Source: Macrostomum lignano (Eukaryota). From it: DNA of 64,000 bases. The first letter of the stretch is position 1, and each line of letters begins with the position of its first letter. Shown piece by piece: positions 1,271-47,730 of the stretch. A program made the position numbers and the translations under genes. The notes under the pieces were generated by a model. It made no database searches. It saw only the letters and a program-made list of their open reading frames with translations, and had not been told where the DNA came from. The stretch lies in contig NIVC01002322.1 of NCBI GenBank assembly GCA_002269645.1, positions 1-64,000 on the forward strand. Reading direction: 5' to 3'.

Positions 1271-2054
1271 GTGAGCACGCTATTCGCTGGAATGTGACAA
1301 CTGACGAAGTTGACGGCCTGACAACCAACGGCGTCCTTATCAACAAGCCGGTGGGCGGCTACTGCCCCGGCAGCCAGCCGGGCCCCTGGTTCGAGGTGAG
1401 CATCGAAGGCCGGCTTTACCCCATGCGTGAGCACCGGGCCACCCCGTCGCATTCGGACGTGCTGCACGCGGTTGACAACTCGCTGATTGACGGCACGGTC
1501 ATCGACCTGTGTGGAGTCTGCCTGGTGTACCGCTCCGCTGAGGGTCTGCGGCGCAGTCCCACCCTGCTGGAGCTCTGCTCGCGAGTTGAGTCGCTCAACC
1601 AGACGCACATCCTGTGCCCGGTCCGCTACCAGACTCTGGTGATCCGGAAGCCCCTGCAAGCGAATCCCGCCTCAGCCGCAGGCGGCGGCGGCTCGATGCC
1701 AGACGATCGGCAGCCGTACGTGTACACCGGCTGCGGCCACGTGCACGGCCTGCACAGCTGGGACAGGCCCGGCGGACAGCAGCAGCCGGACAGGCGAACC
1801 TGTCCGCTGTGTCTGCAACAATCTGCTTTTATTGCCCTACGCCTAGGAGAAGAGGCGGCGCTGTATTTGGACAGAGACGGGATGCCAAATTATGCGTTTA
1901 ACCCGTGCGGTCATATGGCCTCGGAGCTCACAGTGAAGTATTGGTCTGCGCTGCCGCTGCTCACGGCCAGCCAGCTCAGGCCGCTGTGCCCATTCTGCTC
2001 AACACGCTGGCTACTCCGGCCACAATCAGACTGCTGTTCCAGTCTGACATTTGA
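1271..2054 (+). CDS. PELI: Pellino E3 ubiquitin ligase, terminal exon (C-terminal FHA part plus RING-like domain); apparent 1-nt frameshift near 2003
   Basis: Acceptor ...ctcgcgcAG|1271. Motifs: GEHAIRW...DGLTTNGVL, W.E.S..G..Y..RE, L.DG..IDLCG, CPV...TL, QPYVY..CGHVHG, CPLC, FNPCGH, YWS..PL, CPFC. The Pellino-like end IRLLFQSDI* lies in a shifted frame (stop 2052-2054). Upstream exons were not found in the window. Confidence 0.92.
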
Positions 2055-2859
2055 CTGCCTGTTGATTACACACTATTTAACCTCTCGTTATATCTACTTT
2101 CTAAGAATATCGGTCCCGTTTGTTTGTTTCTAAGAATCAGTTTTCTAGGAAACGCAGAAAATCTTATATCATGGAAATATTAAATTAGAACAATTCAAAC
2201 AATTGCTCTTATACGAGTAACCTATGTTCAAAGACTATCCTCTCGACTTCGCGTCTTAGAATTGCTGCTTCGAATTCGTTTCTAAGAATCGCTGCTTCAA
2301 ATTTGTTTCTAAGAATCGCTGCTCAAATTCGATTCTAAGAATCGCTCCTTTGACTTCGATTCTAAGAATCGCTGCTCAAATTCGATTCTAAGAATCGCTG
2401 CTCTGAAATTCGTTTATTAGACTCTACACACGAATTTGTTTCTAAGAAAGGTCACCTAAACTTATTTCTAGGAATCGCACTTACAAAATTGTATATGACA
2501 ATAAAATTTTCTGCTGGGACCTGTTTACTGCGTTATAAACATCTTTCGGCTTCTGTGCTAAGCAAGAATCTGGATGATGAATACCAATAGATTTACCTGT
2601 TAACTTGTTTTGTTATGAAGCAAATTTATTTATTTTTCTCGCCTACTGAGTTTTGTCTTGTACGGCTCGCCAAATAATGCTAGTAATATATGCTTATTCC
2701 TGTGCAAACTGAATCGTGCATACTTGCATACTCTGTGGCTACAGTAGCTGAACTAATAATTTTTACAAATAGATTTTGCTACACTTTATTTGCTTGTACT
2801 TTTGCATTATGGCAGTGCGGCTAAACTTTAAATGGCAGGTGTGTACCGAATTCTGCGTC

Positions 2860-7888: not shown

Positions 7889-9186
7889 AGCTAACTAGTT
7901 AATTAAGTTAATAGCAGCAGTTGGCGGTAGATTTATTAAAAATATTCCTAATGAAGTAAGTTTATTCCTTGGCCGTTGTTTAAATAGTATGAATTGGATT
8001 TAATTAGAGACAAGGCCAAGTAGAGCTTAAATTCTTTACTTCGAAACAAAGTCAAGCTAACGAAAGGAGGACGGAAATGCCCACTCATGTATAGCCAGTC
8101 GTCGGTATAGTTGCTTTTGTGGGGGTTGGAAGGGCTTTCTTATATATTCTTTCTGCTTTAGAAGAAGGCCTCCAATTCAAATAACATCGCAGGGGGGCTT
8201 GAACAGAGGTGACTGGAATGACTCACTATCTATATTATTGCAAAACCAATTGGGGAAATTAAGGCGAGTCTACGGGCCGGGGGGCGGCTATTTTACAGCG
8301 CGTGAGGAGAGAGCGAGACGAGGGGCTCCAACGATTCAAGGAGGGGGCTCCCCTCTGGACTAGACATTTCAATATGTACATTGCGCAATGTACATTTGTT
8401 TTACGATCCAGAACCCCTCTGCCCCCCTCGGCCTCCACATGCGCACGAGTGTTTAGCTGGGGAAAGGGGGTTGGCAAGGCTGGCTTGTCGGCCTTACGGG
8501 CTTTTTGCGCTTAAGTTTTCTAATATGGAGGGTTGCGGCGGGAGTGAGAATTGCACAATTACGAGCTATATATTATCTATCGGAAAAGGACGGAACTGCG
8601 AAGCGGTGACCCGGGCTTAAGGGCGATAGTTAAATTCGAAGGCATAGGAAGGCTTTTTTTTCAAGTTTAGGACAGTTATATTTATAAGAATCTACGACAT
8701 GTAGAATTTAGAATTTTAGTATCAAAGTATCAATTGCACAAAGTACATTACGAGCACTATAAGCAGAAAGAATGTATCTAATTCCGGTGTTGCAAAAAGT
8801 AATCTGTGAAAAGGCAAAAATTGTGTTTTTGTCGAGGCTTAGATTATTAGAAATTCGGCGCCAAAAAGGCCCTAAAATTAAATTTTCATTATTTAGATGG
8901 GAATTTTTGAACGTGTATTAAAAATTATAAACATAACTCGCTCTACGCTACCAGTTTCAGTAGCAATGAGCTATTAGTTGGTCAGTCAGTCGGTCGACAG
9001 TAGTTAAGTTTTCTGAAACAAAGCTGTGATGTCTATGGCAATAGCTAATTTTATTGAAACGCGGAATTGGCAATGCTGTGCGCGAAAGGATTTTTGAGAA
9101 TATTTTACTCTGTTTAGTTATCAATTTCTGTTCCCTTTCAGCAAAGCACGTAGTTGGCTAGCCTGCCTATTCAGCAACACGCTGCC

Positions 9187-10143
9187 ATGTCGGAAAACAC
9201 TCTCAAAGTTGGCGCCGACGAGAAGCCCGTTGACCAGCAGGCTGAAACTGAGAATCAAGACGAAGAATCCAACAAGAAGACTGAGGATCAAAACAAAGAT
9301 AACAAAGAAGCCGAGTCTAAGGATCAAGACAAAGACGACAAAGAAGCCAACGAGACCGAGGATCAAGACAAAGACGACAAAGAAGCCAACGAGACCGAGG
9401 ATCAAGACAAAGACGACAAAGAAGCCAACGAGACTGAGGATCAAAACAAAGACGACAAAGAAGCCAACGAGACTGAGGATCAAGACAAAGACGACAAAGA
9501 AACCAACAAGACTGAGGATCAAGACAAAGACGACAAAGGAGCCGAGATTGAGGATCAAGACGAGGAAGACAAAGAATCCGAGATTGAGGATCAAGACGAG
9601 GAAGACAAAGAATCCGAGACTGAGGATCAAGACAAAGAAGTCAACAAGAAGACTGAAGAGCTAGAGCAAGCAGCCAAGAAGACTGAGGATAAGGACCAGG
9701 CTGAAACTGGGAATACCAGAACTGTCATTCAGCCCGCTGACGATGATGAAGATTATGATGAAGACGAGGACGATGAAATTGTAGATAGTAATGAAGATGA
9801 TACTCCTCCAACTCCTCCTCATAAAAAGTACGAGTACATCCAACATACTAAAAATGATGATGGAACTGACCTGAAGTTGGAATCAAACGAAACGAGAATA
9901 CTGCGCACAGAGGAAGTAAAACAGAGTAAAAAAGAAGAGAAGAAACGAAAAAAGGAGGCCGAAAAGCAAGCTAAGTTAGAAAAGAAGCTAGCCAAGAAGA
10001 ATGAGAAGTTAAAGAAAAAGCAAGAGAAGATGGCTAAAAAGGAAGCGAAAAAGCTCGCGAAGAAGCAGGCGAAAGAGGAAAAAAAACGACGCGAAGACGA
10101 AATAAAGCGGGTGAAAGAGGAAAGGAAACAACGCGAAAAATAA
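9187..10143 (+). CDS. Highly charged repetitive protein: Asp/Glu-rich repeats (DQDKDDKEANETE) followed by a Lys/Glu coiled-coil tail
   Basis: Long ORF from ATG 9187 with codon-periodic repeats and unique non-repeat segments. aataaa follows at ~10169. No family recognised. Confidence 0.65.
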   Translation: MSENTLKVGADEKPVDQQAETENQDEESNKKTEDQNKDNKEAESKDQDKDDKEANETEDQDKDDKEANETEDQDKDDKEANETEDQNKDDKEANETEDQDKDDKETNKTEDQDKDDKGAEIEDQDEEDKESEIEDQDEEDKESETEDQDKEVNKKTEELEQAAKKTEDKDQAETGNTRTVIQPADDDEDYDEDEDDEIVDSNEDDTPPTPPHKKYEYIQHTKNDDGTDLKLESNETRILRTEEVKQSKKEEKKRKKEAEKQAKLEKKLAKKNEKLKKKQEKMAKKEAKKLAKKQAKEEKKRREDEIKRVKEERKQREK

Positions 10144-10482
10144 CAAAAGCAGGCAAAAGCTAAGTAGAATAAAAACAACCGATAAGCTGGAATCCCATCG
10201 ACACCGCACCAATAACTTTCTCAGTCATAAGGTTGCTTTGTCTTTTTGTTGTCGACTCATTGAGCATATGAAATTGATTTGAACAAATAAAAACGATTTG
10301 CGATAATTTCGTTTATTTTGAGTTAATTTAAATTGTAATTTTTTTCTTTATCAGATTACTGAAGGTTGAAACTATCTAACTACTCGGTTTAAAAAAATAA
10401 CATCGTAGCTTGAGCATCAGTGCATGACATACCCCGTACCGTAGCATCCAAAGAAGTTTGATAGCTAGTATCCGTATTAACA

Positions 10483-11492
10483 GCAACAACAACAACAACA
10501 ACAACAACAACAAAAACAACAACAACAACAACAAATTACGCAGCCCCGCAAGCAAAGTCGCAGAGCAGGGTGCGTCAGATGGCGCGCCGCAGAGCCTGAG
10601 AGCGGACGAAGTCCGCCCCGTTGGCAGTGTCGGGCGCCCCGGCGTCGCGTAGGAGGCAGTCCACGTATCGACGGGTTTGGGCCTGACCCCGCCTGAGCGG
10701 GCCCTGCAGGGTGAGCAGCAGGACGTCCTGAACAGGTTGGGGGCAGTAGCTCTGCCCGGATCATGCGGTGGCCCACCAGTTGACGTTGGCACCGGCGCAG
10801 GATGATGGACGGGCGCTGCAGCTTGGCCCGATCGTACAGGGCCTCTGTCCCGACGCTCTTGTCAGCTCGAAAGGCCGCACGGAGCAGTCCTGAGTGCGCC
10901 GAGTCCAGCTGCCGCTCCAGTGTAGCCGTCAGCGTCCACGTCTTAGCGTTGTAGAGCAGGACGGTTTCGACCACCGCCACCACAGCCGAGCCCTCTGGCG
11001 GTCGAGCAGCGTTTCGGACTGGACGACGGCCCGGAAGAAGGCCGCCCAGGCAAGTCCTCGGCGCCGCCGAAGGTTTTCCTCCACGTGAGGCACCAGACCG
11101 CCGAGGTAGATGAACCGCTGGCAGCGTGCTAGCTTGGTTGTCTGCCCGTCTGCGCCGCGGCACGTCAGGTCCGCTGGGATGTCGACCGGCACTGTCAGCA
11201 CCTCAGTCTTCAGAGTGTTGACAACCAGACCAACGCTCGATGCCACCTCGACCAGCTAGGCGCCTTCAACAAGGACAGGAGGGCGAGGTCGTCGGCGTAG
11301 CCAAACACGCTCAGGCGCTTTTCGCCGTGGCGGCGACCGATGCGTCTGCGCAGCAGGAAGCCATCGCCAGCCGAGGGGAGTGCGGTCTGAAGCACCCAGT
11401 CCAGCAGCAGCACGAAGAGCAACGGCGCCAGCGTGTCGCCCTGCAGAACTCCTGATGAAGTGTCGAACAGGTCAGACAGGCGTCACCACAGC
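10483..11492 (-). mobile_element. 5'-truncated, frameshifted RTE-like non-LTR retrotransposon fragment with (TTG)n 3' tail
   Basis: RT motifs SGVLQGDTLAPLLF, VFGYADDLALL and FIYLGG, C-terminal VDCLLRDAGAP..ALRRAI*, then (caa)n on the plus strand. Confidence 0.88.
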
Positions 11493-11512
11493 AATCCCAG
11501 AGCTACATGTAT

Positions 11513-11670
11513 CCAGAGTTCATCCAGACAACTGGACCTTTCTTTCTCCGGCAGGTCCGGTTCCAACTAGATTCCAATCCCAGAGCTATCCAGAGTTCAT
11601 CCAGACAACTGGACCTTTCTTTCTCCGGCAGGTCCGGTTCCAACTAGATTCCAATCCCAGAGCTATCCAG
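11513..11670. repeat. 77-bp direct tandem duplication abutting the RTE fragment 5' end
   Basis: The unit starting ccagagttcatccagac occurs at 11513 and 11590. It is mirrored at ~28785-28942. Confidence 0.9.
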
Positions 11671-12636
11671 TCTTCTCGAATGAATGCGAATCTTTCAACT
11701 TTACATGGCAACTGTCAGATTGCACAGGCTATAACCATTGTTGGTTGGCTGTTGACTTTGAAACAGGTGAAATCCGCACTTTTGTCTTTCTTTCGAAATA
11801 GAAAATAGTAGAAAAAGTTGCAATTGAAAGCAGAATATTTACACAGGACACCATTCACTGTTGGACAATCACATGGCTGAATTTTGAGACAGTCAGGTTT
11901 GTGCGAGGTTTCAGTGTAAAAAAAGTTACAAGCCAGCACAAATGACTTTTGGGAAGAACCTCGTAATTACCAGGATAGATACAATTATAATGAACATCCT
12001 TGAGGAACTTCACTGACCAACCCGAACTCCGAACAAAATTACCAACCGTAACGTCAGGACGGTGCAAGGCAGCGACGATACGTAGGAACTATCAGGGAAC
12101 GAAAGACGGTCCGCTTTTCCCTTTGTAGGACCAGAGAGAATAATGGTAAAAAACGAAAAAATTCAAGGAAAATATCAATAGCTACTTGGAAGAGGAAGTC
12201 AAAGAGAAAAATTCTGTTGCTAAAAAGTATCAGTAAGTAGTATATGCAGCAAGCGCGTCTCGATTTGTTCAAGAGTGAAGTTGTTGAAGAAGGTTCAGTT
12301 GAAAGCTACTGGAACAAAAAGGCACCTTAAATTAAAATACGAATTACTAGCTAATTACTGAATTCTCCATTCTCCCAACTTACGATTCAGGATTCAGATC
12401 CAATACGACTCGTATACTAAAAATTAAAGACTATAGATTCAATTTTCTAAACAAAAATAAGCTTCATCATAGTCTATTTCGTGGACATAGACTATAAATT
12501 TAATTTCACTCCTCCCAGTTCGGAACAGGTCTTTCAAAAGAGCTTGAATAGCCAATTTAAAGTCCTAGCGCGCTTAACTCGCTTAAGAGCAAATAAATCA
12601 AGCAAATTTAAACAGCTGAAGCCTTTAATTGCCAGC

Positions 12637-13053
12637 ATGCGGTCGCGTTCACAGTCACCTGCCGCCTCATCGAGCCAGTCGGAGAAGATGACAACGGATG
12701 CTCCAGCTCAGCTCCAGCGGGCCCGTCCAGCCAAGAGGAAACGCTCCGCTTCCAGGAGCACCGGCAAGAAACGCTCTGCTTCCAGGACCACCGGCAGGAA
12801 ACGCTCCGCCTCCAGGAGCACCGGCAGGAAACGCTCTGCTTCTAGGGGCACCGGCAGGAAACGCTCTGCTTCCAGGAGCACCGGCGGCAGGAAACGCTCT
12901 GCTTCCAGGGGAACCGGCAGGAAACGCTCCGCTTCTAGGAGCACCGGCAGGAAACGCTCTGCTTCCAAGGCCACTGGCAGGAAGCGCAGCCGAACAGCCA
13001 AGAAGTCATCAGCCAAACGCATGAAGATGGCCGAGAAGAAGCCGACGAAGTGA
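12637..13053 (+). CDS. Protamine-like / sperm nuclear basic protein candidate, copy 1
   Basis: 138 aa, intronless, R/K/S-rich, with 8 decapeptides (R/K)KRSAS(R/K)xTG. TATA-like ctataaat at ~12492. Confidence 0.7.
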   Translation: MRSRSQSPAASSSQSEKMTTDAPAQLQRARPAKRKRSASRSTGKKRSASRTTGRKRSASRSTGRKRSASRGTGRKRSASRSTGGRKRSASRGTGRKRSASRSTGRKRSASKATGRKRSRTAKKSSAKRMKMAEKKPTK

Positions 13054-13819
13054 AATTGGCGAGAGTTAGGCCTCGCTGATTGGCAGTCCACTACCTAAAC
13101 GATACAAGGACTCGGCTCCCATTATTTGCTATTTTTAGTTCAATCATTACCTCAGGAACATTAAAAAATCCACAGTGATTCAATGATACCGGGTATACTG
13201 TGCTTCTTAAACATTTTAGGGATTAAATTGGCCAGACTCTAGGCGAAATAAATAATTTTCCACTTTCTGTTCATGTAGGCAGCAGCTAACAGTCTCGAAT
13301 AAACAGAGAAAGACCAGATATGATTTTAAAAGCTAATGCTCTTAGACGCTTTTTCTTTTTCTTTACTCAAAAAAAGTGATAAAAAACAGCTGCTTATGAG
13401 CTAATGTATGAAAGTATGCAGACCCGAAAGAGGCAATTATGAATTATAACTGAGCTTGAAGTTTCTTCGAGACGAACGTAAAAAGCCCGTGAATAAGCCT
13501 CGGAAAAAGTGCACCATATACAGTATACTCGTATTGTATACGAGTACTTTGCTTCAGATGAAATTACAGTTACTTGTAGTTAAAAACCCTTTTACAGGAG
13601 CGTCGCCTTGGATTATGGTAGGGGGGGGGGCGGACACAGCCAAGAATTCTACATGTACGAGTACATGACTTAATCCCTACATGTATTTTGAGAATAGATG
13701 TTGTTAGCACTTAGTTTGTCGCCCTAAAGCAACGCTATTGATTTCAACAATTGGTTACAAGGTATAGGGTGAGGGGACAAAGCATTGGGATCCCAATACA
13801 CTGCCTATTGATGGGGGTT

Positions 13820-18045: not shown

Positions 18046-18531
18046 TTGCACCAATGTGTAAATTTATTGGCACCTATAGGAAAAATCATCCTTTGCAGTA
18101 GCTAGCCTAAATTACGGTAAAAACCATTGTTATAAAGCTGTAATCTAAAGATTTTATGAATATTTTAGAATACATCAGCGCTAAACTCTCGAAATTAGGT
18201 ACCTATGCTTTTTCTTCATCCGGATTGTTAGCAAACAATCGAGCAGCTTTACTTAATTAACTTTATGAAAAGGCGAGTAAAGATATCGGTACATAAATAG
18301 CTTTTTCATCTGTCTTATCTTCTGACTAAAACATTTCGCAAGAATTTTTAAAGACAAGAAGAAACTTTGCGCCAAAAATTGAAGAAGTATTCATTCTTTA
18401 TTTGTCGCAGCGAAGGGCTCCTAACGCACAAGAATCCACGTATAATGTTCATATCATAGATTTGGTTCTATCAGAACCCATTCACTAACTAAAACGTCGC
18501 AATCTTGTGGTCTTTTAGAGTCGCATCACTT

Positions 18532-19588
18532 TCACTCGCTATCCTCCTCGGGAGTTGGAGATGGGCGCGGCCTTCGTGGACGGTTCTCTCTCTTTTCGTC
18601 ATCCTCCTCGGGAGTTGGAGATGGACGCGGCCTTGGACGGTTCTCCCTCTTGTCGTCATCCTCAGGAGTTGGAGATGGACGCGGCCTTGGACGGTTCTCC
18701 CTCTTGTCGTCATCCTCCTCAGGAGTTGGAGATGGACGCAGCCTTGGACGGTTCTCCCTCTTGTCGTCATCCTCCTCAGGAGTTGGAGATGGGCGTGGCC
18801 TTGGACGGTTCTCTCTCTTGTCGTCGTCATCACTATCGTCCTCATCATCATCCTCCTCAGGAGTTGGAGATGGACGCGGCCTCGATGGACACGGCCTTGA
18901 ATGACGGTTCTCCCTCTTGTCGTCATCCTCCTCAGGAGTTGGAGATGGACGCGGCCTTGGACGGTTCTCCCTCTTGTCGTCATCCTCCTCGGGAGTTGGA
19001 GATGGACGCGGCCTTGGACGGTTCTCTCTCTTGTCGTCATCCTCCTCAGGAGTTGGAGATGGGCGTGGCCTTGGACGGTTCTCTCTCTTGTCGTCGTCAT
19101 CACTATCGTCCTCATCATCATCCTCTTCAGGAGTTGGAGATGGACGCGGCCTCGATGGACACGGCCTTGAATGACGGTTCTCTCTCTTGTCGTCGTCATC
19201 ACTATCGTCCTCATCATCATCCTCCTCAGGAGTTGGAGATGGACGCGGCCTCGATGGACACGGCCTTGAATGACGGTTCTCTCTCTTGTCGTCATCCTCC
19301 TCGGGAGTTGGAGATGCACGCGGCCTTGGACGGTTCTCTCTCTTGTCGTCATGCTCCTCGGGAGTTGGGGATGGCGGCGGCCTTGGTGGACGGTTCTCCC
19401 TCTTGCTTGCATCCTCCTCAGGAGTTGGAGATGGAGGAGGTCTTGGCATCTGTAATATTTCCCATTTTTCATTGATTTTTGCACTCTGGTAGAGGGCTTC
19501 TCCAAAGTTATTGCATTTCAGAAACAGTCGAATTTATTACCGCAGCAGCCACTGCAATTGTCACCAGAAGAAGCACAATCAACTTCAT
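18532..19588 (-). CDS. Secreted multi-copy peptide precursor (signal peptide plus 14 Pro/Arg-rich segments separated by 13 KR sites)
   Basis: TATA (tatataaa) at ~19669-19676. Exon 1 19588-19541 encodes MKLIVLLLVTIAVAAA, followed by GT..AG intron 19540-19450. Exon 2 19449-18532 encodes (KR-ENRPRPRPSPTPEEDDD)n. Confidence 0.8.
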
Positions 19589-20311
19589 GTTCTCAGGAGT
19601 AAAGATTTGACCAGCTGTAATTTGACCAAACTCAAACTCCAAAGATTTGGTTGATTTCTGCTGGTACATTTATATAGACAGCCAGCTCCGATTTTCTCCA
19701 GTGATCTCACAATGCCTGTTTACTCAGACTGAAAGTCGTCGCTTTGTTTCCACGTGCTCAAAATCTTTTGTTTATGTCATTGTTTCTTTCTCTGCTTTAT
19801 TTTTAAGAAAAACTGCTGTATCGTCAAAATCTAGATTATGAAAAGAATTGCAACAAGTAAAACAATGACTTATTCTCTGAGACGAAGCTGTCAATGGATA
19901 AAATCCGTTTTGGGTATTGTTTCGCTGAGACTTTGGGATATCATGTGGCTCTCGATGAATAATAGACTTGAATAACAGAATAAGACTTAGCCTAGTCTCA
20001 GAAATTCTTTCAGTTTGAGCACCAGGTGGAAGTTAAGAATTGTCAATAGAAGCATTTTCATTTATTCAACTCTGGTCTTTGAGAACAAAATGGATTTTTG
20101 ATCGTCTATTTTTAGCCTCAACCCGAAGAAAGTTTGTGCCTGATCGATGTTTTCAGCTTACGCTTACCAAAGAAAGTTTCAATGGTCACGTGGGTCTTGA
20201 CTTACTTGACTTAGCTGCAGGGGGCGTCCGGCGGATGCAGCGGGGAGGCGGAGGAGACCGCCCATTCCGCTAGCCCCTGGCGACCAACGACTTCCGTTGA
20301 AGTGGTGTCGC

Positions 20312-23300
20312 TCAGGGGGACCCGTCGGTCTCGCCTGCAGCGCGGTCCTCCTCACCGGCGGTGGGGAAGAAGTCAGCTCGTCCCGTGTCCCTGAGGTACC
20401 GGGCGAGCAGCGGGATGCTCTCGGGCCTGCAAACGTCGGAGAGAACCGGGTTAGGCCCTAGGTGAGTGAGCCTGGCCCTGGTGAAGACCGGGCAGTGGCA
20501 GATAAAATGCTCGGCGTTTTCACTGCCTGAGCGGCAGAAGGGGCACCGCTCCTCGGGTACTTGGCCCTGAAGGAAGCGGTGGCGAGAGAAGCAGCCATGC
20601 CCGGAGAGGGCCATGCTAACTGCTCTGAGGTCTCTGCGGTTGAGCCTGAGGAGGGCCCTACGCAGGAGAGGGGAGGGGCAGGGGACAGCAGCGCGGGATT
20701 GCCTACAATTCCGGGTGTCGTGCCACCTGCGGAGATGCTCGGAGTCAGCCCAGCGCTTAACGCGGGAGTTGATCACCGAGGCGGGGATGGGGGCACCCGG
20801 GCCCGGCCCCAGCAGCGCGCCGGCGGAGCCAGCCTTGACCAGCAGGTCAGCGCGCTCGTTGCCGAGGAAGCCGGCGTGGCCCGGGATCCATCTGAGCTCC
20901 ACCTGGTTGCCTAGCGCAAGCCCGTTGAGCTGGGTGTTGCAGTCCAGGACGGACCTGGAGCTGGCGGTGCTGCGGCAGAAGGGCTACTTGGCTGTCAGAG
21001 TGAAAAATAAATTTCCGACCGCTAAGCTGCCTTCGGCGCAGCTCTGCCGCGCAGGAGCTGATGGCAAGCACCTCGCTCTGAAAAACACTGGAGTTGAGCC
21101 CAGTGTGCTGGGAGTAGCTCCACACCACTTCTCCCTTGAAGAAGACGCAAGCTCCGAAGCCTGAGAGACCATGCCTCATAGAGCCGTCAGTGTAACAGTG
21201 GACTTCAGAATCGTTCCAGCTGTCACTCGCCTCGTGTCGAGGCTGAATAGTGACCTTATACCTTTGGCTCAGGAGAAGGGTGGCTGGGATCGAGTCCGTG
21301 GGAATGTTAAGCCCGCCACACTCATCGAGAGCCTTGAGGCAGAGGTCAGAGTGCGGGATAAGCGACCGCTTCTTAAAGGCCCGCACTTTCTTGAAGGCCA
21401 CCCCAGCATCCAGAAGACGCCGGGTGCTCTTCGCGGCCTCTCCTTTGATATAAATATCCAGAGGAGGGGCACAGAGGAAGGCATTCATGCCTTCAAAAGT
21501 AGAGGGTGGAGCGCCCATAGTCATGCGGCAGGCTCTGCCCTGGATTTTGTAGAGAGCGTCGTGGTTGCTCTTGACGCTCAGGCCGCTAGCCCACACGAGG
21601 CTGGCGTAACTGATCGAGGGGCGGATGATGGCAGTGTAAATCCACCACAGCTTCCTGGGGGTGAGCCCCCAGGTGGTGCCCACGGCGCGCCTGATCTGAG
21701 CCAGGACAGCCAGGGCTTTTTTGGCTTTCGTTTGAATGTGCGGGGTCCAGTTAAGCCTGTGGTCCAAAGTGAGGCCCAGGCAGCGGACCTGCTTCTCCAT
21801 GGAAATATCCTTTCCATAGAGGGTGAGGGGCTTAATGGTCCAGAGCAGTTTGTTGGTAAACATGACCGCTGTGGTCTTCGACTCTGAGAGTCTAAGGCCA
21901 CATTGGTTTGCCCAGCGCTCCGCTCGATCCAGAAAGCCTTGCAGAAGGTCTCTGATGGTATCAACCGAGGGGCCCGCGCATATTGCGGTCACATCATCGG
22001 CATAGCCCACCTTGAGAATGGGGTCGTGGAGATCACTGCAAAGCAACTCATCCATGACCATGTTCCAGAGAACGGGGGTGAGAACTCCGCCCTGGGGGCC
22101 CCCTTTCTGGACAGGCGCCGAAAGAGAGCTGCCGTTCAGGTGGGCCACAACAGTGCGGTTTCGGATCATGAACATGATCCACCGGACAAGGTGAGGGTGC
22201 GTGGCCCTGGATTCCAGGGCTCTGCAAAAGGCCTCGAAGATGACGTTGTCGAAGGCCCCCTCAATGTCCAGGAAAAGCAAGAGGGCAAAGCCGCTGCCAA
22301 GAACGGCCCTCTCCAGGAAGTCAACAATGACATGGAGGGCACTCTCGGTAGACCTGCCCGCGCGGAAGGCGTGCTGGTTCTGCGAGAGTGGGAAGCGCTT
22401 CAGCTCGACCGAAAGTAGGCGCCAAAGCACCAGTCTCTCGAGGAGCTTGAGGCAGAAAGAAGTGAGGCTGATAGGCCTGAAGGCCTTCACCGATTGATAG
22501 TCGCTCTTTCCAGGCTTGGGGATAAAGACCACCCGGGCCTCTCTCCACGCAACTGGTACAGCCCAGCTCCACACAAGCTCGAAGGAGACGACAGAGCAGG
22601 TCCAGGAAGCGGTGGTTCTTCACCGCCTCGTGCAAGAACGCTGGGTAGATGCCGTCGGGCCCAGGCGCCTTGAACTGGTTAAAGGACCTTGCCGCTCTAA
22701 TAATGCGGTCTTTGGTGATTATAGACTTTGCTAGGCCTTGCCCTCCCACTGTGTGGTCAGGCGGGCCCTGCTGAGTCGGAGATTTAGGGAAGAAACTGTT
22801 GAGCATTAGCTCTAGAGTCTCTTCCGAGTTCTCTGTGACTGAGCCATCAGGTCTCTTCACAACAGAGAGTTTAGAAAAACGGTCGTTAGTGAGTGCCTTA
22901 ACCACGCGGGCTACGGGGCGAGAGCCCTCAAGCCCTTCGCAATATTGGCGCCACTTGGCCGTCTTGGCCCTTCTGACTTGGCCCTTAAACTCGTGGATCG
23001 CACGGGTATAGGCCTCTCTGTCAGATGGGTCTTTGGTTTTGAGCGCTCGCCTTTGGAGGGTCCTGGCTCGGCGCCGTAGGGCCCCGAGCTCTGGGTTCCA
23101 CCAGGGAGCAGATTTCTTGCCTTTATAGGCTTTTAGAGGGCAGGCTGCTTCAAAGGCAGTGGTGATCGCCCCGCCCAGGGAGGAGGCGAGATCATCCACC
23201 ACCTGGCAGTCAGAGAGGTCACTGGGGGGTCAAGATCCCGAATGCCGCGGCTCAGCTTCGAGCCAAAGGCGGCCCAATCGGTGTTCCTGACGTTCCGACT

Positions 23301-23999
23301 CCAAGTGACCTTAGGCTTTTGCTTGGTCGGCCCAATGCAAAAGCGGATAAAGCGGTGGTCCGAGAGTGAGTCCTCGTCCCACACTCGCCAGCCCGTGACT
23401 TCGGAAAGCAGTCCGGGTGAGGCGATGGTGGTGTCAATGACTTCGGCCCACCACCCATAATTGAACGTTGGTGCATTGCCCACGTTACAGAAATTGAGGT
23501 TTGTGCTGCTGACGTAGGCCAGCAGCTCCTCGCCTCTGTTATTGGTGTTCTTGCTGCCCCAATGCAGGTGGTGTGCGTTCACATCCCCTGCAATGAGCAG
23601 CTCGAACCGGCGGGACGCGGCGTAGTCAATGAGGTTGACTAGTGCGTCGCAGACTACTGGGGCATCGCCTGGGAAATAGGCGGATGCTACCAGCACAGGT
23701 TTATTTGGAATGAGGTTATTGATTTGAACAACACAGATGTCCCCAGTCGAGAGATCAGGTCTCATCCATGCCTCAAAAGCTTTTGCAGCAAAGACCAGAG
23801 ATCTTGGGCGAGGCTGAGAGCCCGCCATGCAAAAACAGTGGTAGCCAGATGGCACATTATTTGGCTTACCTTAAGTCATCCAGGGCTCCTGCACGAAGAC
23901 CAGGCCCGGAAGCTGTTGCTCTGTCGTGCGCATCAGGTTGACTGACGCCGCCACGCAGTGCTGGGTGTTGATCTGCAGACACCAGGTAGCCACTGGCAT
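20312..23999 (-). pseudogene. LINE ORF2 (AP endonuclease, reverse transcriptase, RNase H, C-terminal CCHC) with one premature stop and ~3 frameshifts
   Basis: APE: LQINTQHC..S, VQEPW, GDVNAHH..WGS, SLSDH. RT: IPKPGK..RPISLTS, FLDIEGAFDN, GGPQGGVL, YADD. RNase H: YTDGS, QSEVLAI, SDSQ, WIPGHAG..GNERAD. Knuckle: CPFC..ENAEHFICHC. Confidence 0.92.
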
Positions 24000-25649: not shown

Positions 25650-27401
25650 GGGGAACCGTTAGCGACCAGACTACTCCCTGGCCAAGCGTCCATCAGCACG
25701 GAGTTACACTGGGACATTAGAGGGTGCGTTTATATGGTCACACCAGGACCCGGCGCCAACGAATCAGCTCGGCAAGCCCCAAGAGCCTGCCTTAACACCC
25801 ACGGGACGAGTACCCTTCGAAGTGCGCCTTGCAAGGTGAAAATCAGGAGACAGAGTCTCTTGAGCTATCAGCCCGCCAGGGGAGGCAGGTGTGAGCATCG
25901 CTGGCTGGGATAAGGCCATACCAGTCTCATACTGCACAGATAGTTCACCACGCCATTGCGTGCAGGACCCGGGGTCACGTGGGTCATTTAAAATCAATCG
26001 TAGTCATCACAAGAAATGTGTGAAACGCGACTGCATGGCGAACCTTGTGCGTCTTCGTAAAAGGTCCGGACCACTGTCTGCTAGACGAGCTCTCTAGCTG
26101 TCGAGTAGCATGCTCAAGCAAGCACTAGCTATATACATATGAGGACTTCCCCTGAAAAATATGATCTTGATAATAATTCTTTTTTTCTCGCCCAATTGAT
26201 TTTAGACCGTAAAAATGGTTCCTTTCAGAATTTCCCCAATATTCGAGATCTGTAGATGAGCTATCGATAATACGAGCGTAACGTATACGAGTATAGGACA
26301 TTTTTGTTGTCAATATGTGATCAATAGGGGTGCCTTCACAAGGTCGAAATTTCACGTCGAAAAGCAAGTTATTTCACAACGTCGAAAACTCTAGCAAGAG
26401 ACTTCATAAGGTCGAAATTTGACATCAAAAACTTGAATAGCAGCCACTTAAAGATTCACAATGCGGAAAAAATAGTTTTCCACGTGCAATTTTAACCCTC
26501 TGAAGCCCTTTGCTAAAGTTTTCGATGTTGTGAAACTTCGACCTCTTGAATTCGATCTTGTGATAGCGGCTGCAAATTGAGTTTTTGACCTTTTGAAGGA
26601 AGTTGCTTTTGACGTTGTGAAACTTCGAGTTTATGAAACCCCCATCAATAGGCAGTGTATTGGGATCCCAATGCTTTGTCCCCTCACCCTACCTTGTAAC
26701 CAATTGTTGAAATCAATAGCGTTGCTTTAGGGCGACAAACTAAGTGCTAACAACATCTATTCTCAAAATACATGTAGGGATTAAGTCATGTACTCGTACA
26801 TGTAGAATTCTTGGCTGTGTCCGCCCCCCCCCCCTACCATAATCCAAGGCGACGCTCCTGTAAAAGGGTTTTTAACTACAAGTAACTGTAATTTCATCTG
26901 AAGCAAAGTACTCGTATACAATACGAGTATACTGTATATGGTGCACTTTTTCCGAGGCTTATTCACGGGCTTTTTACGTTCGTCTCGAAGAAACTTCAAG
27001 CTCAGTTATAATTCATAATTGCCTCTTTCGGGTCTGCATACTTTCATACATTAGCTCATAAGCAGCTGTTTTTTATCACTTTTTTTGAGTAAAGAAAAAG
27101 AAAAAGCGTCTAAGAGCATTAGCTTTTAAAATCATATCTGGTCTTTCTCTGTTTATTCGAGACTGTTAGCTGCTGCCTACATGAACAGAAAGTGGAAAAT
27201 TATTTATTTCGCCTAGAGTCTGGCCAATTTAATCCCTAAAATGTTTAAGAAGCACAGTATACCCGGTATCATTGAATCACTGTGGATTTTTTAATGTTCC
27301 TGAGGTAATGATTGAACTAAAAATAGCAAATAATGGGAGCCGAGTCCTTGTATCGTTTAGGTAGTGGACTGCCAATCAGCGAGGCCTAACTCTCGCCAAT
27401 T

Positions 27402-27818
27402 TCACTTCGTCGGCTTCTTCTCGGCCATCTTCATGCGTTTGGCTGATGACTTCTTGGCTGTTCGGCTGCGCTTCCTGCCAGTGGCCTTGGAAGCAGAGCG
27501 TTTCCTGCCGGTGCTCCTAGAAGCGGAGCGTTTCCTGCCGGTTCCCCTGGAAGCAGAGCGTTTCCTGCCGCCGGTGCTCCTGGAAGCAGAGCGTTTCCTG
27601 CCGGTGCCCCTAGAAGCAGAGCGTTTCCTGCCGGTGCTCCTGGAGGCGGAGCGTTTCCTGCCGGTGGTCCTGGAAGCAGAGCGTTTCTTGCCGGTGCTCC
27701 TGGAAGCGGAGCGTTTCCTCTTGGCTGGACGGGCCCGCTGGAGCTGAGCTGGAGCATCCGTTGTCATCTTCTCCGACTGGCTCGATGAGGCGGCAGGTGA
27801 CTGTGAACGCGACCGCAT
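27402..27818 (-). CDS. Protamine-like / sperm nuclear basic protein candidate, copy 2
   Basis: Translation identical to 12637-13053. Confidence 0.7.
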   Translation of the reverse strand: MRSRSQSPAASSSQSEKMTTDAPAQLQRARPAKRKRSASRSTGKKRSASRTTGRKRSASRSTGRKRSASRGTGRKRSASRSTGGRKRSASRGTGRKRSASRSTGRKRSASKATGRKRSRTAKKSSAKRMKMAEKKPTK

Positions 27819-28962
27819 GCTGGCAATTAAAGGCTTCAGCTGTTTAAATTTGCTTGATTTATTTGCTCTTAAGCGAGTTAAGCGCGCTAGGACTTTAAAT
27901 TGGCTATTCAAGCTCTTTTGAAAGACCTGTTCCGAACTGGGAGGAGTGAAATTAAATTTATAGTCTATGTCCACGAAATAGACTATGATGAAGCTTATTT
28001 TTGTTTAGAAAATTGAATCTATAGTCTTTAATTTTTAGTATACGAGTCGTATTGGATCTGAATCCTGAATCGTAAGTTGGGAGAATGGAGAATTCAGTAA
28101 TTAGCTAGTAATTCGTATTTTAATTTAAGGTGCCTTTTTGTTCCAGTAGCTTTCAACTGAACCTTCTTCAACAACTTCACTCTTGAACAAATCGAGACGC
28201 GCTTGCTGCATATACTACTTACTGATACTTTTTAGCAACAGAATTTTTCTCTTTGACTTCCTCTTCCAAGTAGCTATTGATATTTTCCTTGAATTTTTTC
28301 GTTTTTTACCATTATTCTCTCTGGTCCTACAAAGGGAAAAGCGGACCGTCTTTCGTTCCCTGATAGTTCCTACGTATCGTCGCTGCCTTGCACCGTCCTG
28401 ACGTTACGGTTGGTAATTTTGTTCGGAGTTCGGGTTGGTCAGTGAAGTTCCTCAAGGATGTTCATTATAATTGTATCTATCCTGGTAATTACGAGGTTCT
28501 TCCCAAAAGTCATTTGTGCTGGCTTGTAACTTTTTTTACACTGAAACCTCGCACAAACCTGACTGTCTCAAAATTCAGCCATGTGATTGTCCAACAGTGA
28601 ATGGTGTCCTGTGTAAATATTCTGCTTTCAATTGCAACTTTTTCTACTATTTTCTATTTCGAAAGAAAGACAAAAGTGCGGATTTCACCTGTTTCAAAGT
28701 CAACAGCCAACCAACAATGGTTATAGCCTGTGCAATCTGACAGTTGCCATGTAAAGTTGAAAGATTCGCATTCATTCGAGAAGACTGGATAGCTCTGGGA
28801 TTGGAATCTAGTTGGAACCGGACCTGCCGGAGAAAGAAAGGTCCAGTTGTCTGGATGAACTCTGGATAGCTCTGGGATTGGAATCTAGTTGGAACCGGAC
28901 CTGCCGGAGAAAGAAAGGTCCAGTTGTCTGGATGAACTCTGGATACATGTAGCTCTGGGATT

Positions 28963-29970
28963 GCTGTGGTGACGCCTGTCTGACCTGTTCGACACTTCAT
29001 CAGGAGTTCTGCAGGGCGACACGCTGGCGCCGTTGCTCTTCGTGCTGCTGCTGGACTGGGTGCTTCAGACCGCACTCCCCTCGGCTGGCGATGGCTTCCT
29101 GCTGCGCAGACGCATCGGTCGCCGCCACGGCGAAAAGCGCCTGAGCGTGTTTGGCTACGCCGACGACCTCGCCCTCCTGTCCTTGTTGAAGGCGCCTAGC
29201 TGGTCGAGGTGGCATCGAGCGTTGGTCTGGTTGTCAACACTCTGAAGACTGAGGTGCTGACAGTGCCGGTCGACATCCCAGCGGACCTGACGTGCCGCGG
29301 CGCAGACGGGCAGACAACCAAGCTAGCACGCTGCCAGCGGTTCATCTACCTCGGCGGTCTGGTGCCTCACGTGGAGGAAAACCTTCGGCGGCGCCGAGGA
29401 CTTGCCTGGGCGGCCTTCTTCCGGGCCGTCGTCCAGTCCGAAACGCTGCTCGACCGCCAGAGGGCTCGGCTGTGGTGGCGGTGGTCGAAACCGTCCTGCT
29501 CTACAACGCTAAGACGTGGACGCTGACGGCTACACTGGAGCGGCAGCTGGACTCGGCGCACTCAGGACTGCTCCGTGCGGCCTTTCGAGCTGACAAGAGC
29601 GTCGGGACAGAGGCCCTGTACGATCGGGCCAAGCTGCAGCGCCCGTCCATCATCCTGCGCCGGTGCCAACGTCAACTGGTGGGCCACCGCATGATCCGGG
29701 CAGAGCTACTGCCCCCAACCTGTTCAGGACGTCCTGCTGCTCACCCTGCAGGGCCCGCTCAGGCGGGGTCAGGCCCAAACCCGTCGATACGTGGACTGCC
29801 TCCTACGCGACGCCGGGGCGCCCGACACTGCCAACGGGGCGGACTTCGTCCGCTCTCAGGCTCTGCGGCGCGCCATCTGACGCACCCTGCTCTGCGACTT
29901 TGCTTGCGGGGCTGCGTAATTTGTTGTTGTTGTTGTTGTTTTTGTTGTTGTTGTTGTTGTTGTTGTTGCT
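28963..29970 (+). mobile_element. RTE-like fragment, duplicated copy in right arm
   Basis: GVLQGDTLAP and YADD motifs and (ttg)n tail. Mirror of 10483-11492. Confidence 0.88.
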
Positions 29971-30309
29971 GTTAATACGGATACTAGCTATCAAACTTCT
30001 TTGGATGCTACGGTACGGGGTATGTCATGCACTGATGCTCAAGCTACGATGTTATTTTTTTTAAACCGAGTAGTTAGATAGTTTCAACCTTCAGTAATCT
30101 GATAAAGAAAAAAATTACAATTTAAATTAACTCAAAATAAACGAAATTATCGCAAATCGTTTTTATTTGTTCAAATCAATTTCATATGCTCAATGAGTCG
30201 ACAACAAAAAGACAAAGCAACCTTATGACTGAGAAAGTTATTGGTGCGGTGTCGATGGGATTCCAGCTTATCGGTTGTTTTTATTCTACTTAGCTTTTGC
30301 CTGCTTTTG

Positions 30310-31464
30310 TTATTTTTCGCGTTGTTTCCTTTCCTCTTTCACCCGCTTTATTTCGTTTTCGCGTCGTTTTTTTTCCTCTTTCGCCTGCTTCTTCGCGAGC
30401 TTTTTCGCTTCCTTTTTAGCCATCTTCTCTTGCTTTTTCTTTAACTTCTCATTCTTCTTGGCTAGCTTCTTTTCTAACTTAGCTTGCTTTTCGGCCTCCT
30501 TTTTTCGTTTCTTCTCTTCTTTTCTACTCTGTTTTACTTCCTCTGTGCGCAGTATTCTCGTTTCGTTTGATTCCAGCTTCAGGTCAGTTCCATCATCATT
30601 TTTAGTATGTTGGATGTACTCGTACTTTTTATGAGGAGGAGTTGGAGGAGTATCATCTTCATTACTATCTACAATTTCATCTTCTTCTTCTTCTTCTCCG
30701 TTTATCGCCTTGCGGCGTGGAGTGAACAGCGTCAGGCTTCACCGGAAGTGCGTTTGTGTCGCGCCATGTTTGTCGCCGATAACGTTCTTCCGCACCTGTC
30801 GCATTCTGCTGTCTTCCCTCGGTATTTTCTTGCTCAATTCTCTTGTTCTCCTCCATCTCCGGTGGACTGTGGTGTTGTTCAATTTCATCTTCTTCTTCTT
30901 CATCATCTTCGTCATCATCGTCAGCGGGCTGAATGATAGTTCTGGTATTCTCAGTTTCAGCCTGGTCCTTATCCTCAGTCTTCTTGGCTGCTTGCTCTAG
31001 CTCTTCAGTCTTCTTGTTGACTTCTTTGTCTTGATCCTCAGTCTCGGATTCTTTGTCTTCCTCGTCTTGATCCTCAATCTCGGATTCTTTGTCTTCCTCG
31101 TCTTGATCCTCAATCTCGGATTTTTTGTCTTTCTCGTCTTGATCCTCAGTCTCGTTGGCTTATTTGTCGTCTTTGTCTTGATCCTCAGTCTTGTTGGTTT
31201 CTTTGTCGTCTTTGTCTTGATCCTCAGTCTCGTTGGCTTCTTTGTCGTCTTTGTCTTGATCCTCGGTCTCGTTGGCTTCTTTGTCGTCTTTGTCTTGATC
31301 CTCGGTCTCGTTGGCTTCTTTGTCGTCTTTGTCTTGATCCTCGGTCTCGTTGGCTTCTTTGTCGTCTTTGTCTTGATCCTCGGTCTCGTTGGCTTCTTTG
31401 TCGTCTTTGTCTTGATCCTTAGACTCGGCTTCTTTGTCATCTTTGTCTTGGTCCTCAGTCTTCT
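30310..31464 (-). pseudogene. 5'-truncated copy of the acidic/Lys-rich gene carrying a frame-disrupting ~210-bp insert
   Basis: Homology to the left copy starts at 31464 with no ATG in frame. The insert is flanked by duplicated caatttcatcttcttcttcttc and leads to TGA. Confidence 0.65.
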
Positions 31465-42390: not shown

Positions 42391-42500
42391 GTAAGAAATC
42401 TCGACGCTCTTCAATACTGTTGACTTGAAATATTTGTATTAAATGAGGTATTGTTAAAAGTGGAGTTTCCCTGGCGCTTACAGCAGTTGAGTTGGCTGAG

Positions 42501-47680: not shown

Positions 47681-47730
47681 CTGTCTGCTTCTAGTAGACA
47701 GTTGCCTGAATTTCTAGCGTTACATTCTCT

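What the first reader, a model, noticed from the sequence alone, without database searches (positions are those of the whole stretch)
18532..19680. Hidden spliced gene for a secreted polyprotein releasing Pro/Arg-rich peptides with acidic tails at 13 KR sites
Seen: TATA box, a 48-nt first exon encoding a pure signal peptide, a 91-nt GT-AG intron, then 14 segments such as ENRPRPRPSPTPEEDDD and a longer Cys-containing variant ENRHSRPCPSRPRPSPTPEEDDDEDDSDDDD, each delimited by KR. The ORF track shows only the second exon. Established: KR is the canonical prohormone-convertase site. Multi-unit precursors pairing Pro/Arg peptides with acidic spacers are known for apidaecin, and PRP/Ser-Thr motifs occur in drosocin-type antimicrobial peptides. 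Inference: a novel proline-rich antimicrobial, seminal-fluid or mucus peptide family. No C-terminal Gly amidation signal is present, which argues against a classical amidated neuropeptide.
Basis: partly seen in the sequence, partly recalled or inferred. Interest (0 to 1): 0.76.

Follow-up and report, generated by a model that had tools for sequence, protein, structure and literature searches.

The report
Unannotated flatworm secreted repeat-peptide precursor gene
This looks like a real but unannotated two-exon gene of the flatworm Macrostomum lignano for a secreted, unstructured protein of 14 proline/arginine-plus-acid repeats, each ending in a Lys-Arg cutting site; it has no relatives anywhere, and neither its expression nor its function could be tested.

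Summary
On the minus strand there is a TATATAAA (19676-19669) and a 48-nt exon encoding MKLIVLLLVTIAVAAA (19588-19541). A 91-nt GT-AG intron follows, then a 918-nt exon (19449-18532) of 14 repeat units with 13 KR pairs, and AATAAA 130 nt after the stop.

The window is the first 64 kb of Macrostomum lignano contig NIVC01002322.1. Three things argue for coding sequence rather than a chance minisatellite:
- All unit lengths are multiples of 3.
- Variable sites are enriched at third codon positions.
- Signal-peptide-like starts are very rare in the window.

A second in-frame acceptor (19486, 55-nt intron) cannot be excluded.

The protein has no homologue among 1.84 billion cluster representatives and no Pfam domain, and AlphaFold2 predicts disorder. 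It is absent from GenBank proteins. The likely reason is that the deposited annotation dropped transcripts overlapping tandem repeats.

Best reading: a secreted polyprotein cut at KR into small proline-rich peptides. Those peptides are net anionic (-1 to -9) and lack the apidaecin C-terminal motif, so the antimicrobial analogy is weak. Expression, splicing, cleavage and tissue are all untested.

It is a lineage-specific member of a known architectural class, of modest interest.

The parts
19669..19676 (-). TATA box (TATATAAA), 81-88 nt upstream of the start codon
   Evidence: There are 13 such octamers in 128 kb of both strands.
19589..19646 (-). Inferred 5' UTR, assuming a transcription start about 25-30 nt after the TATA box. 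It has no upstream ATG. It contains ATTACAG (19621-19615), identical to the intron acceptor heptamer, which may be a spliced-leader acceptor.
   Evidence: The start site is inferred, not shown.
19541..19588 (-). Exon 1 coding part: 48 nt encoding MKLIVLLLVTIAVAAA, a signal peptide with n-region MK, a 14-residue hydrophobic core and A-x-A before the junction.
   Evidence: The core has a mean Kyte-Doolittle value of 3.09. It is one of only 4 such starts in the window.
19450..19540 (-). Intron, 91 nt, GTAATA...ATTACAG, GC 0.34. It holds an in-frame stop and three out-of-frame ATGs, so it must be removed for a sensible product.
   Evidence: Its style matches the BCKDK intron in the same window.
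19486..19487 (-). Alternative in-frame acceptor AG (CCCTCTACCAG|AGTGC). It would give a 55-nt intron and add 12 residues (SAKINEKWEILQ).
18532..19449 (-). Exon 2 coding part, made entirely of 14 repeat units and ending in TGA (18534-18532) exactly where the 14th KR would be.
19084..19281 (-). Two adjacent long 99-nt units (ENRHSRPCPSRPRPSPTPEEDDDEDDSDDDDKR).
   Evidence: They differ only by one synonymous GAG/GAA change.
18814..18912 (-). Third long 99-nt unit. Together with three short units it forms the second copy of a 270-nt higher-order repeat.
18397..18402 (-). Poly(A) signal AATAAA, 130 nt after the stop codon.

Best explanation
This is a genuine, lineage-specific two-exon gene of Macrostomum lignano.

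Proposed mechanism:
1. Exon 1 supplies a cleavable 16-residue signal peptide.
2. Exon 2 supplies a roughly 36-kDa, strongly acidic (net -30), intrinsically disordered protein made only of repeat units.
3. In the secretory pathway a subtilisin-like proprotein convertase (PC2/PC1/3 or Kex2-type) cuts after each of the 13 KR pairs.
4. A carboxypeptidase then removes the K and R.
5. The products are about 14 small peptides: mostly the 17-mer ENRPRPRPSPTPEEDDD, plus three copies of a 31-mer with one Cys.

Each peptide has a Pro/Arg head in which nearly every Arg is followed by Pro, and so is shielded from trypsin-like cleavage. Each has a PSPTP motif well suited to O-glycosylation, and an acidic tail. 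The peptides are net anionic and are probably exocrine gland products rather than classical amidated neuropeptides or cationic antimicrobials.

Shown: the sequence anatomy, the organism, the absence of relatives and the predicted disorder.
Inferred: transcription, the splice junction, secretion, cleavage, modifications and tissue.
For: Gene model:
- TATA box, a first AUG in good context, GT-AG intron, in-phase junction and AATAAA are all present.
- Signal-peptide-like starts are rare: 4 in 128 kb, one placed exactly here and followed by GT.
- GC content drops in the intron and the UTRs.
- The retained intron would give a 26-aa product, and its three out-of-frame ATGs would block use of the ATG at 19449.

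Coding constraint:
- All units and all unit-length differences are multiples of 3.
- 15 of 29 variant nucleotide differences fall at third codon positions. Among the seven 57-nt and three long units it is 6 of 8.

Polyprotein logic:
- The array starts right after the signal peptide and ends at the stop, which replaces the last KR (AAG AGA becomes GAG TGA).
- All 13 Lys of the mature protein sit in KR pairs.
- KR is kept in the diverged edge units (DASKR, HDDKR, DDEKR) while neighbouring residues vary.
- 37 of 56 Arg are followed by Pro.

Other support:
- AlphaFold2 gives pLDDT 50, pTM 0.12 and no secondary structure.
- In planarians pc2 RNAi lowered a specific set of peptides, so flatworms have convertase-dependent prohormone processing; Collins et al. 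accept prohormone genes on a signal sequence plus basic sites flanking the peptides (PMC2953531).
- Absence from GenBank proteins is explained by the repeat filter used for the deposited annotation (PMC5730564).
Against: - No transcript, splice-junction, peptide or expression evidence could be obtained.
- M. lignano RNA-seq-derived proteins appear to be missing from the searchable collections: the BCKDK cluster has only NCBI/UniRef-type sources.
- Tandem and simple repeats make up 15% of this genome, and the array is open in 4 of 6 frames.
- The KR sites are not independent, because the units are recent copies of one another.
- At 321 aa the protein exceeds the <200 aa used to define planarian prohormones.
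- There is only one KR per unit, so the acidic tail stays attached to the Pro/Arg head. No known bioactive peptide class looks like this.
- No homologue exists to show conservation.
Confidence: 0.5

Rival explanations
1. The gene is real and the product is secreted, but it is not cut. It acts as an intact, disordered, acidic polyampholyte. Possible roles are a glycosylated or phosphorylated matrix, mucus or rhabdite component, a seminal-fluid component, or a granule-packing or coacervating component. In this reading KR is simply the basic end of a charge-blocked repeat.
For: - The mature protein has strongly segregated charge blocks and a net charge of -30.
- It is fully disordered.
- At 321 aa it is longer than typical prohormones.
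- KR conservation can be explained by recent unit duplication, as shown by the 270-nt higher-order repeat and 99% identical long units.
- Large repetitive secreted proteins are known gland products in this species, for example Mlig-ap1 and Mlig-ap2 (PMC6410801).
Against: - Every Lys is in a KR pair at a unit boundary, and nearly all other Arg are Pro-protected.
- KR persists in diverged edge units, and the protein ends where a KR would be.
- Exposed KR in a disordered secretory protein is an ideal convertase substrate (established knowledge of PC/Kex2 specificity).
Confidence: 0.25
2. It is not a functional gene. It is a minisatellite that happens to be open in several frames, with a fortuitous upstream ATG, hydrophobic stretch and GT-AG pair, or else a decaying or unexpressed gene copy.
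For: - Tandem and simple repeats are 15% of the genome.
- The window holds dozens of minisatellites, several of them open in many frames.
- The array is open in 4 of 6 frames.
- There is no homologue and no annotated protein.
- The locus lies next to a degenerate LINE, inside a 13-kb spacer between perfect inverted repeats.
Against: - Unit lengths and indels are all multiples of 3, and substitutions are biased to third codon positions.
- Signal-peptide-like starts are rare, and one lies exactly upstream, in phase and followed by GT.
- TATA and AATAAA sit at sensible distances.
- The array boundaries coincide with the acceptor and the stop codon.
- Absence from GenBank has a procedural explanation.
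Confidence: 0.12
3. It is a proline-rich antimicrobial-peptide polyprotein analogous to apidaecin or drosocin. The acidic tail would act as an attached neutralising pro-piece that a further protease removes to free cationic NRPRPRPSPTP-type peptides.
For: - The polyprotein layout with dibasic sites and Pro/Arg-rich cores matches the general design of apidaecin precursors (PMC11549390).
- The PRP and S/T-P motifs resemble O-glycosylated drosocin and pyrrhocoricin (my own knowledge, not tested here).
Against: - The predicted peptides carry -1 to -9, whereas active Type II PrAMPs carry +3 to +6.
- There is no PRPPHPRL motif.
- There is no cleavage site between PSPTP and EEDDD.
- The spacer architecture differs: RR-EAEPEAEP lies N-terminal of the peptide in apidaecin.
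- Apidaecin-like peptides were found only in bees and wasps.
- No sequence similarity was detected.
Confidence: 0.05

Closest known systems
Fungal KEX2-processed repeat proteins (KEPs), including yeast alpha-factor precursors
   Same: Signal peptide followed by a protein made of near-identical short peptide cores, each ending in KR. In silico KR cleavage yields far more than the required four repeated fragments (definition in PMC6339444).
   Different: It comes from an animal, not a fungus. There is no X-Ala/X-Pro STE13 signature directly after KR, because the next residues are E-N. The peptides are zwitterionic, with an acidic tail. No sequence similarity was found.
Flatworm peptide prohormones (planarian npp/spp genes, Collins et al. 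2010)
   Same: Signal sequence plus basic cleavage sites flanking repeated peptides, in the same phylum. [quoted passage not shown]
   Different: At 321 aa it exceeds their <200 aa criterion. It has no Gly amidation signal. Its extreme Pro/Arg/Asp/Glu composition is unlike known flatworm neuropeptides. Neuronal expression is unknown.
Apidaecin-type (Type II PrAMP) pre-pro-polyproteins of bees and wasps
   Same: A pre-pro-polyprotein of repeated Pro/Arg-rich peptides with acidic residues and dibasic processing sites (PMC11549390).
   Different: It has no PRPPHPRL pharmacophore. The peptides are net anionic rather than +3 to +6. [quoted passage not shown] The phylum is different.
Mammalian salivary basic proline-rich protein polyproteins (from my own knowledge, not tested here)
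   Same: Secreted, disordered, tandem-repeat, Pro-rich exocrine proteins that convertases cut into many small peptides.
   Different: Those use RSxR-type sites, are Gly/Gln/Pro-rich and lack acidic tails. There is no homology.
P0121, the only database hit: a 944-aa secreted protein with RPKPSPTPGNTTNTTHKTT repeats
   Same: It shares the R-P-[KR]-P-S-P-T-P motif (E 8.8e-7, 33% identity).
   Different: It is a Thr-rich mucin-like array with a 20-aa period, with no KR and no acidic tail, followed by a large folded C-terminal region. The match is at the level of motif and composition, not homology.

Membership tests
Apidaecin-type (Type II) PrAMP polyprotein | Pre-pro-polyprotein with multiple repeated peptide units | tested here: met
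   14 units follow a signal peptide.
Apidaecin-type (Type II) PrAMP polyprotein | Conserved C-terminal PRPPHPRL-like pharmacophore | tested here: not met
   The units end in ...PSPTPEEDDD and no PRPPHPRL is present. The definition is from PMC11549390.
Apidaecin-type (Type II) PrAMP polyprotein | Released peptides are cationic (+3 to +6) | tested here: not met
   The predicted peptides carry -1 to -9, with pI 4.1-5.2.
Apidaecin-type (Type II) PrAMP polyprotein | Processing signal of the RR-EAEPEAEP type, N-terminal of each peptide | tested here: not met
   KR is followed by E-N-R-P. The acidic residues precede KR as the tail of the previous unit.
Flatworm peptide prohormone (criteria of Collins et al. 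2010) | Signal sequence | tested here: met
   It meets heuristic criteria only: MK, a 14-residue hydrophobic core and AAA. SignalP was not available.
Flatworm peptide prohormone (criteria of Collins et al. 2010) | Basic cleavage sites flanking the predicted peptides | tested here: met
   There are 13 KR pairs, one at every unit boundary.
Flatworm peptide prohormone (criteria of Collins et al. 2010) | Precursor shorter than 200 aa | tested here: not met
   The precursor is 321 aa. The criterion is in PMC2953531.
Flatworm peptide prohormone (criteria of Collins et al. 2010) | cDNA-verified gene model and peptides confirmed by mass spectrometry | not testable with these tools
   No M. lignano transcript or peptidome data were reachable.
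KEX2-processed repeat protein (operational definition) | Secreted protein that yields at least 4 repeated fragments on in silico cleavage at KR/RR | tested here: met
   Cleavage gives 14 fragments. The definition is in PMC6339444. The class is defined for fungi, so this is resemblance, not membership.
Mucin-type PTS-repeat protein | Repeats dominated by Ser/Thr/Pro with dense O-glycosylation sites | tested here: not met
   Ser+Thr is 12.8%, while Arg+Lys+Asp+Glu is 55%. The mucin threshold is my own rule of thumb.
Non-coding minisatellite | Unit lengths and indels unconstrained by reading frame, and substitutions spread evenly over codon positions | tested here: not met
   All units are 51, 54, 57, 60 or 99 nt. 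Differences by codon position are 7, 7 and 15.

The most novel reading that the evidence does not exclude
The anionic, protease-resistant peptides cut from this precursor could be the still-unidentified 'small negatively charged' releasing factor of the M. lignano duo-gland adhesive organs. They would be secreted from releasing-gland vesicles to compete with the Lys/Arg-rich cohesive protein Mlig-ap1 and trigger detachment.

The factor was still described as unknown in 2019 and 2022 (PMC6410801; PMC9229212). The predicted peptides carry -3 (17-mer) and -9 (31-mer).

Against this reading: releasing vesicles of another flatworm, Minona ileanae, had low nitrogen content (PMC6745481). That argues against a peptide cargo. 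Nothing links this gene to the tail plate.
Probability: 0.03. Interest if true: 0.8.

Novelty: new member of a known kind. Interest (0 to 1): 0.3.

Why it matters
If it is expressed, this gene adds an orphan peptide family to a flatworm model that is used for work on adhesion, regeneration and sexual conflict.

It also exposes a systematic blind spot. The GenBank annotation of this genome excluded transcripts that overlap tandem-repeat annotations. Secreted repeat polyproteins are exactly the class that includes pheromone, neuropeptide, antimicrobial and gland-product precursors, and they are preferentially missing from the public protein set.

The predicted peptides (Pro/Arg head, O-glycosylation motif, acidic tail) are easy to synthesise. 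They can be looked for by non-tryptic mass spectrometry.

Tried and rejected
Searches that found nothing:
- Word-indexed protein search with the full spliced product. There were no hits, and the 8000-candidate list may have been filled by low-complexity words.
- Exhaustive HMMER search of 1.84 billion cluster representatives. It found only a compositional hit to a mucin-like protein.
- Pfam.
- Exact-sequence look-ups of the 321-aa and 305-aa products and of two alternative-frame ORFs. None is on record.
- Back-translated scans of metagenome and prokaryotic genome contigs.
- Full-text search for the peptide strings in papers, and in the supplements of the M. lignano seminal-fluid screen.
- Rfam on the whole window.
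- tblastn of the units and blastn of the flanks against the window. There is no second copy in the window.

Attempt to see the GenBank gene calls at the locus through neighbouring ORFs:
- The ORFs at 12637-13053 and 9187-10143 are not on record.
- The 190-aa neighbour has no homologues.
- Only the BCKDK neighbourhood (51.9-73.5 kb) could be retrieved.

Readings rejected:
- Membership of the apidaecin family, because three defining features fail.
- A mucin, on composition.
- Translation from the ATG at 19449 without splicing, because three out-of-frame ATGs lie upstream of it in the intron.

Full report
**What is there**

- TATATAAA at 19676-19669.
- An ATG at 19588 with A at -3.
- A 48-nt coding stretch, MKLIVLLLVTIAVAAA, ending at 19541.
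- GTAATA...ATTACAG from 19540 to 19450 (91 nt).
- An open frame from 19449 to the TGA at 18534-18532.
- AATAAA at 18402-18397, 130 nt after the stop.

The spliced product is 321 aa. After the signal peptide it consists only of 14 units separated by 13 KR pairs:
- A first unit, MPRPPPSPTPEEDAS.
- A slightly diverged second unit.
- Eight regular short units of the ENRPRPRPSPTPEEDDD type.
- Three identical 33-aa units, ENRHSRPCPSRPRPSPTPEEDDDEDDSDDDDKR.
- A last unit, ENRPRRPRPSPTPEEDSE, that runs into the stop.

Tandem Repeats Finder reports periods of 57, 99 and 270 nt at 92-99% match. The 270-nt period is one long unit plus three short ones, so the array grew by recent block duplication.

**Where it comes from**

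The window is eukaryotic. It has very uneven GC, no Rfam hit and dozens of minisatellites. It carries Pellino, aldo-keto reductase, AN1 zinc-finger and BCKD-kinase gene fragments and a LINE reverse transcriptase.

The BCKD-kinase ORF is 100% identical to Macrostomum lignano BOX15_Mlig025482g1. That gene lies at 61897-63454 of contig NIVC01002322.1 of assembly GCA_002269645.1. These are the same numbers as in the window, so the window is bases 1-64000 of that contig.

**Is it a gene or a lucky minisatellite?**

ORF length is no argument, because the array is open in four of six frames and 15% of this genome is tandem or simple repeat (PMC5730564). Other evidence does discriminate.

1. A scan of all ATGs on both strands looked for a start followed by 14 uncharged residues with mean hydropathy of at least 2.5. 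It finds four in 128 kb. One is 19588(-), and it is followed immediately by GT. Another is a repeat artefact on the opposite strand of the array.
2. GC content is 0.39 in the leader, 0.48 in exon 1, 0.34 in the intron, 0.58 in exon 2 and 0.39 in the trailer. The only other intron I could place exactly, in the BCKD-kinase gene, is likewise AT-rich with a ...TTTGCAG acceptor.
3. Unit lengths are 51, 60, 57, 99, 99, 57, 57, 57, 99, 57, 57, 54, 57 and 57 nt. Every one, and every difference between them, is a multiple of three.
4. Among the seven 57-nt and three long units, 6 of 8 variable sites are third codon positions. Over all 14 units the counts by codon position are 7, 7 and 15, with 10 synonymous and 13 non-synonymous codon variants. 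The non-synonymous ones are concentrated in the three edge units.
5. If the intron stayed in, the first AUG would give a 26-aa product. Three out-of-frame ATGs in the intron would also intercept ribosomes before the ATG at 19449.

I put the probability that this is a real coding gene at about 0.8.

One correction to the finding concerns the acceptor. The donor at 19540 is clearly the best. But a second in-frame acceptor at 19486 (CCCTCTACCAG|A, 55-nt intron) has the better pyrimidine tract. It would add SAKINEKWEILQ between the signal peptide and the first unit. Base composition favours the 91-nt intron. Only cDNA can decide, and neither choice changes the picture.

**Relatives and annotation**

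- The spliced protein has no Pfam domain.
- It has no hit in the word-indexed search.
- An exhaustive HMMER pass over 1.84 billion cluster representatives gave one hit, P0121 (E 8.8e-7). This is a Thr-rich mucin-like protein with RPKPSPTPGNTT repeats, a motif-level coincidence.
- Neither the 321-aa nor the 305-aa sequence, nor the alternative-frame ORFs, exists in the 15-billion-protein collection.
- Scans of metagenome and prokaryotic contigs found nothing, and no paper contains the peptide strings.

So the gene is an orphan and is missing from GenBank proteins. The genome paper explains why. [quoted passage not shown] The gene may therefore be present in the unfiltered community transcriptome. 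'Hidden' applies to the public protein set only.

The searchable collections seem to hold no M. lignano RNA-seq-derived proteins: the BCKD-kinase cluster has only NCBI/UniRef-type sources. The lack of transcript-derived hits is therefore uninformative.

**What it most likely does**

The mature protein is 24% Pro, 18% Arg, 18% Asp and 15% Glu, with no Gly, net charge -30 and pI 4.7. AlphaFold2 gives pLDDT 50, pTM 0.12 and no secondary structure. It is disordered.

Several features fit a precursor that is cut once per unit:
- The array fills the whole mature protein.
- All 13 lysines are in KR pairs at unit boundaries.
- KR survives in the diverged edge units while its neighbours change.
- The stop codon sits where the 14th KR would be.
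- 37 of 56 arginines are followed by proline, which blocks trypsin-like and convertase cleavage.
- KRENR also contains R-x-x-R, which is Pro-blocked in short units and open (RENR|H) in the three long units.

Flatworms have convertase-dependent prohormone processing: in planarians pc2 RNAi lowered a specific set of peptides, and a signal sequence plus basic sites flanking the peptides is the accepted prohormone criterion (PMC2953531).

The products would be a 2.0-kDa 17-mer and a 3.6-kDa 31-mer. They might carry an N-terminal Glu that could cyclise, a PSPTP motif favourable for O-GalNAc, and T-P-E-E or S-D-D motifs favourable for acidophilic kinases. These modifications are inferences from general knowledge, not tests.

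I give the cleaved-polyprotein reading about 0.5, an uncleaved secreted polyampholyte about 0.25, and a non-functional locus about 0.12.

**Comparison with known families**

The architecture matches fungal KEX2-processed repeat proteins by their operational definition (PMC6339444), and it matches flatworm prohormones except for length.

It does not qualify as an apidaecin-type precursor. There is no PRPPHPRL, the peptides carry -1 to -9 rather than +3 to +6, and the spacer geometry differs. That family has been found only in bees and wasps (PMC11549390).

By my own rule of thumb it is not mucin-like either, because Ser+Thr is only 12.8%.

The seminal-fluid and gland ideas remain untested. M. 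lignano reproduction-related genes are reported to evolve rapidly (PMC7336406, abstract). That is compatible with orphan status but does not show it.

**Most novel reading not excluded**

The releasing factor of the M. lignano adhesive organ is proposed to be a small negatively charged molecule. It was still unidentified in 2019 and 2022. Anionic peptides from this precursor would fit the charge requirement.

However, releasing vesicles of Minona ileanae were low in nitrogen, and nothing ties this gene to the tail. I give this reading about 3%.

**Verdict**

The function is unknown but is most plausibly a secreted KR-processed repeat-peptide precursor. It is a new, lineage-specific member of a known architectural class. 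Interest is modest until expression data are consulted, and those data already exist publicly and would settle the main points quickly.

Noticed in passing
window 10484-13630 and 26825-29971 (extended, less perfect arms 9250-10397 and 30056-31464): A 3,147-nt inverted repeat that is 100% complementary, with further 88-99% arms outside it. It encloses a 13.2-kb spacer that holds the target gene and a LINE. It could be a real inverted segmental duplication or a long-read assembly artefact near the contig start.
   Followed up: partly
window 20312-23855, minus strand: A degenerate non-LTR retrotransposon split into at least four overlapping ORFs. The endonuclease is at 23133-23855, the reverse transcriptase at 20847-22574 and an RNase H remnant at 20312-20902. 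Its 3' end lies about 0.6 kb upstream of the target gene's TATA box.
   Followed up: partly
window 44950-46476 (-), 9154-10143 (+), 12481-13053 (+) and its copy 27402-27974 (-): Other coding-looking tandem arrays. They are EDYGADDD repeats (24/45-nt period, about 50 copies), EDQDKDDKEANET repeats followed by a Lys/Glu-rich tail, and GRKRSASRST repeats. None has a Pfam domain, and the last has no homologues. These too are probably lost from the GenBank annotation through the repeat filter.
   Followed up: partly
window 19615-19621, minus strand: The heptamer ATTACAG in the predicted 5' UTR is identical to the intron's acceptor heptamer (19450-19456). It could be a spliced-leader trans-splice acceptor, since 38.8% of M. 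lignano genes are trans-spliced.
   Followed up: no
window 19667-19669, minus strand: An ATG overlapping the TATA box is in frame with the signal-peptide ATG (53-aa ORF 19669-19508). If transcription started further upstream, the hydrophobic segment would sit 27 residues into the protein.
   Followed up: no
window 48452, minus strand: Another signal-peptide-like start (MGIFFILFLVGAFITT) next to a 40-nt minisatellite at 47730-48145. It was not examined further.
   Followed up: no
window 1294-2133 (+), 39502-41514 (+), 42492-43118 (+), 61897-63454 (-): Conventional genes in the window: Pellino (FHA and RING domains), an aldo-keto reductase in at least two exons, an AN1 zinc-finger protein, and BCKD kinase (two exons with one roughly 313-nt AT-rich intron).
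   Followed up: partly
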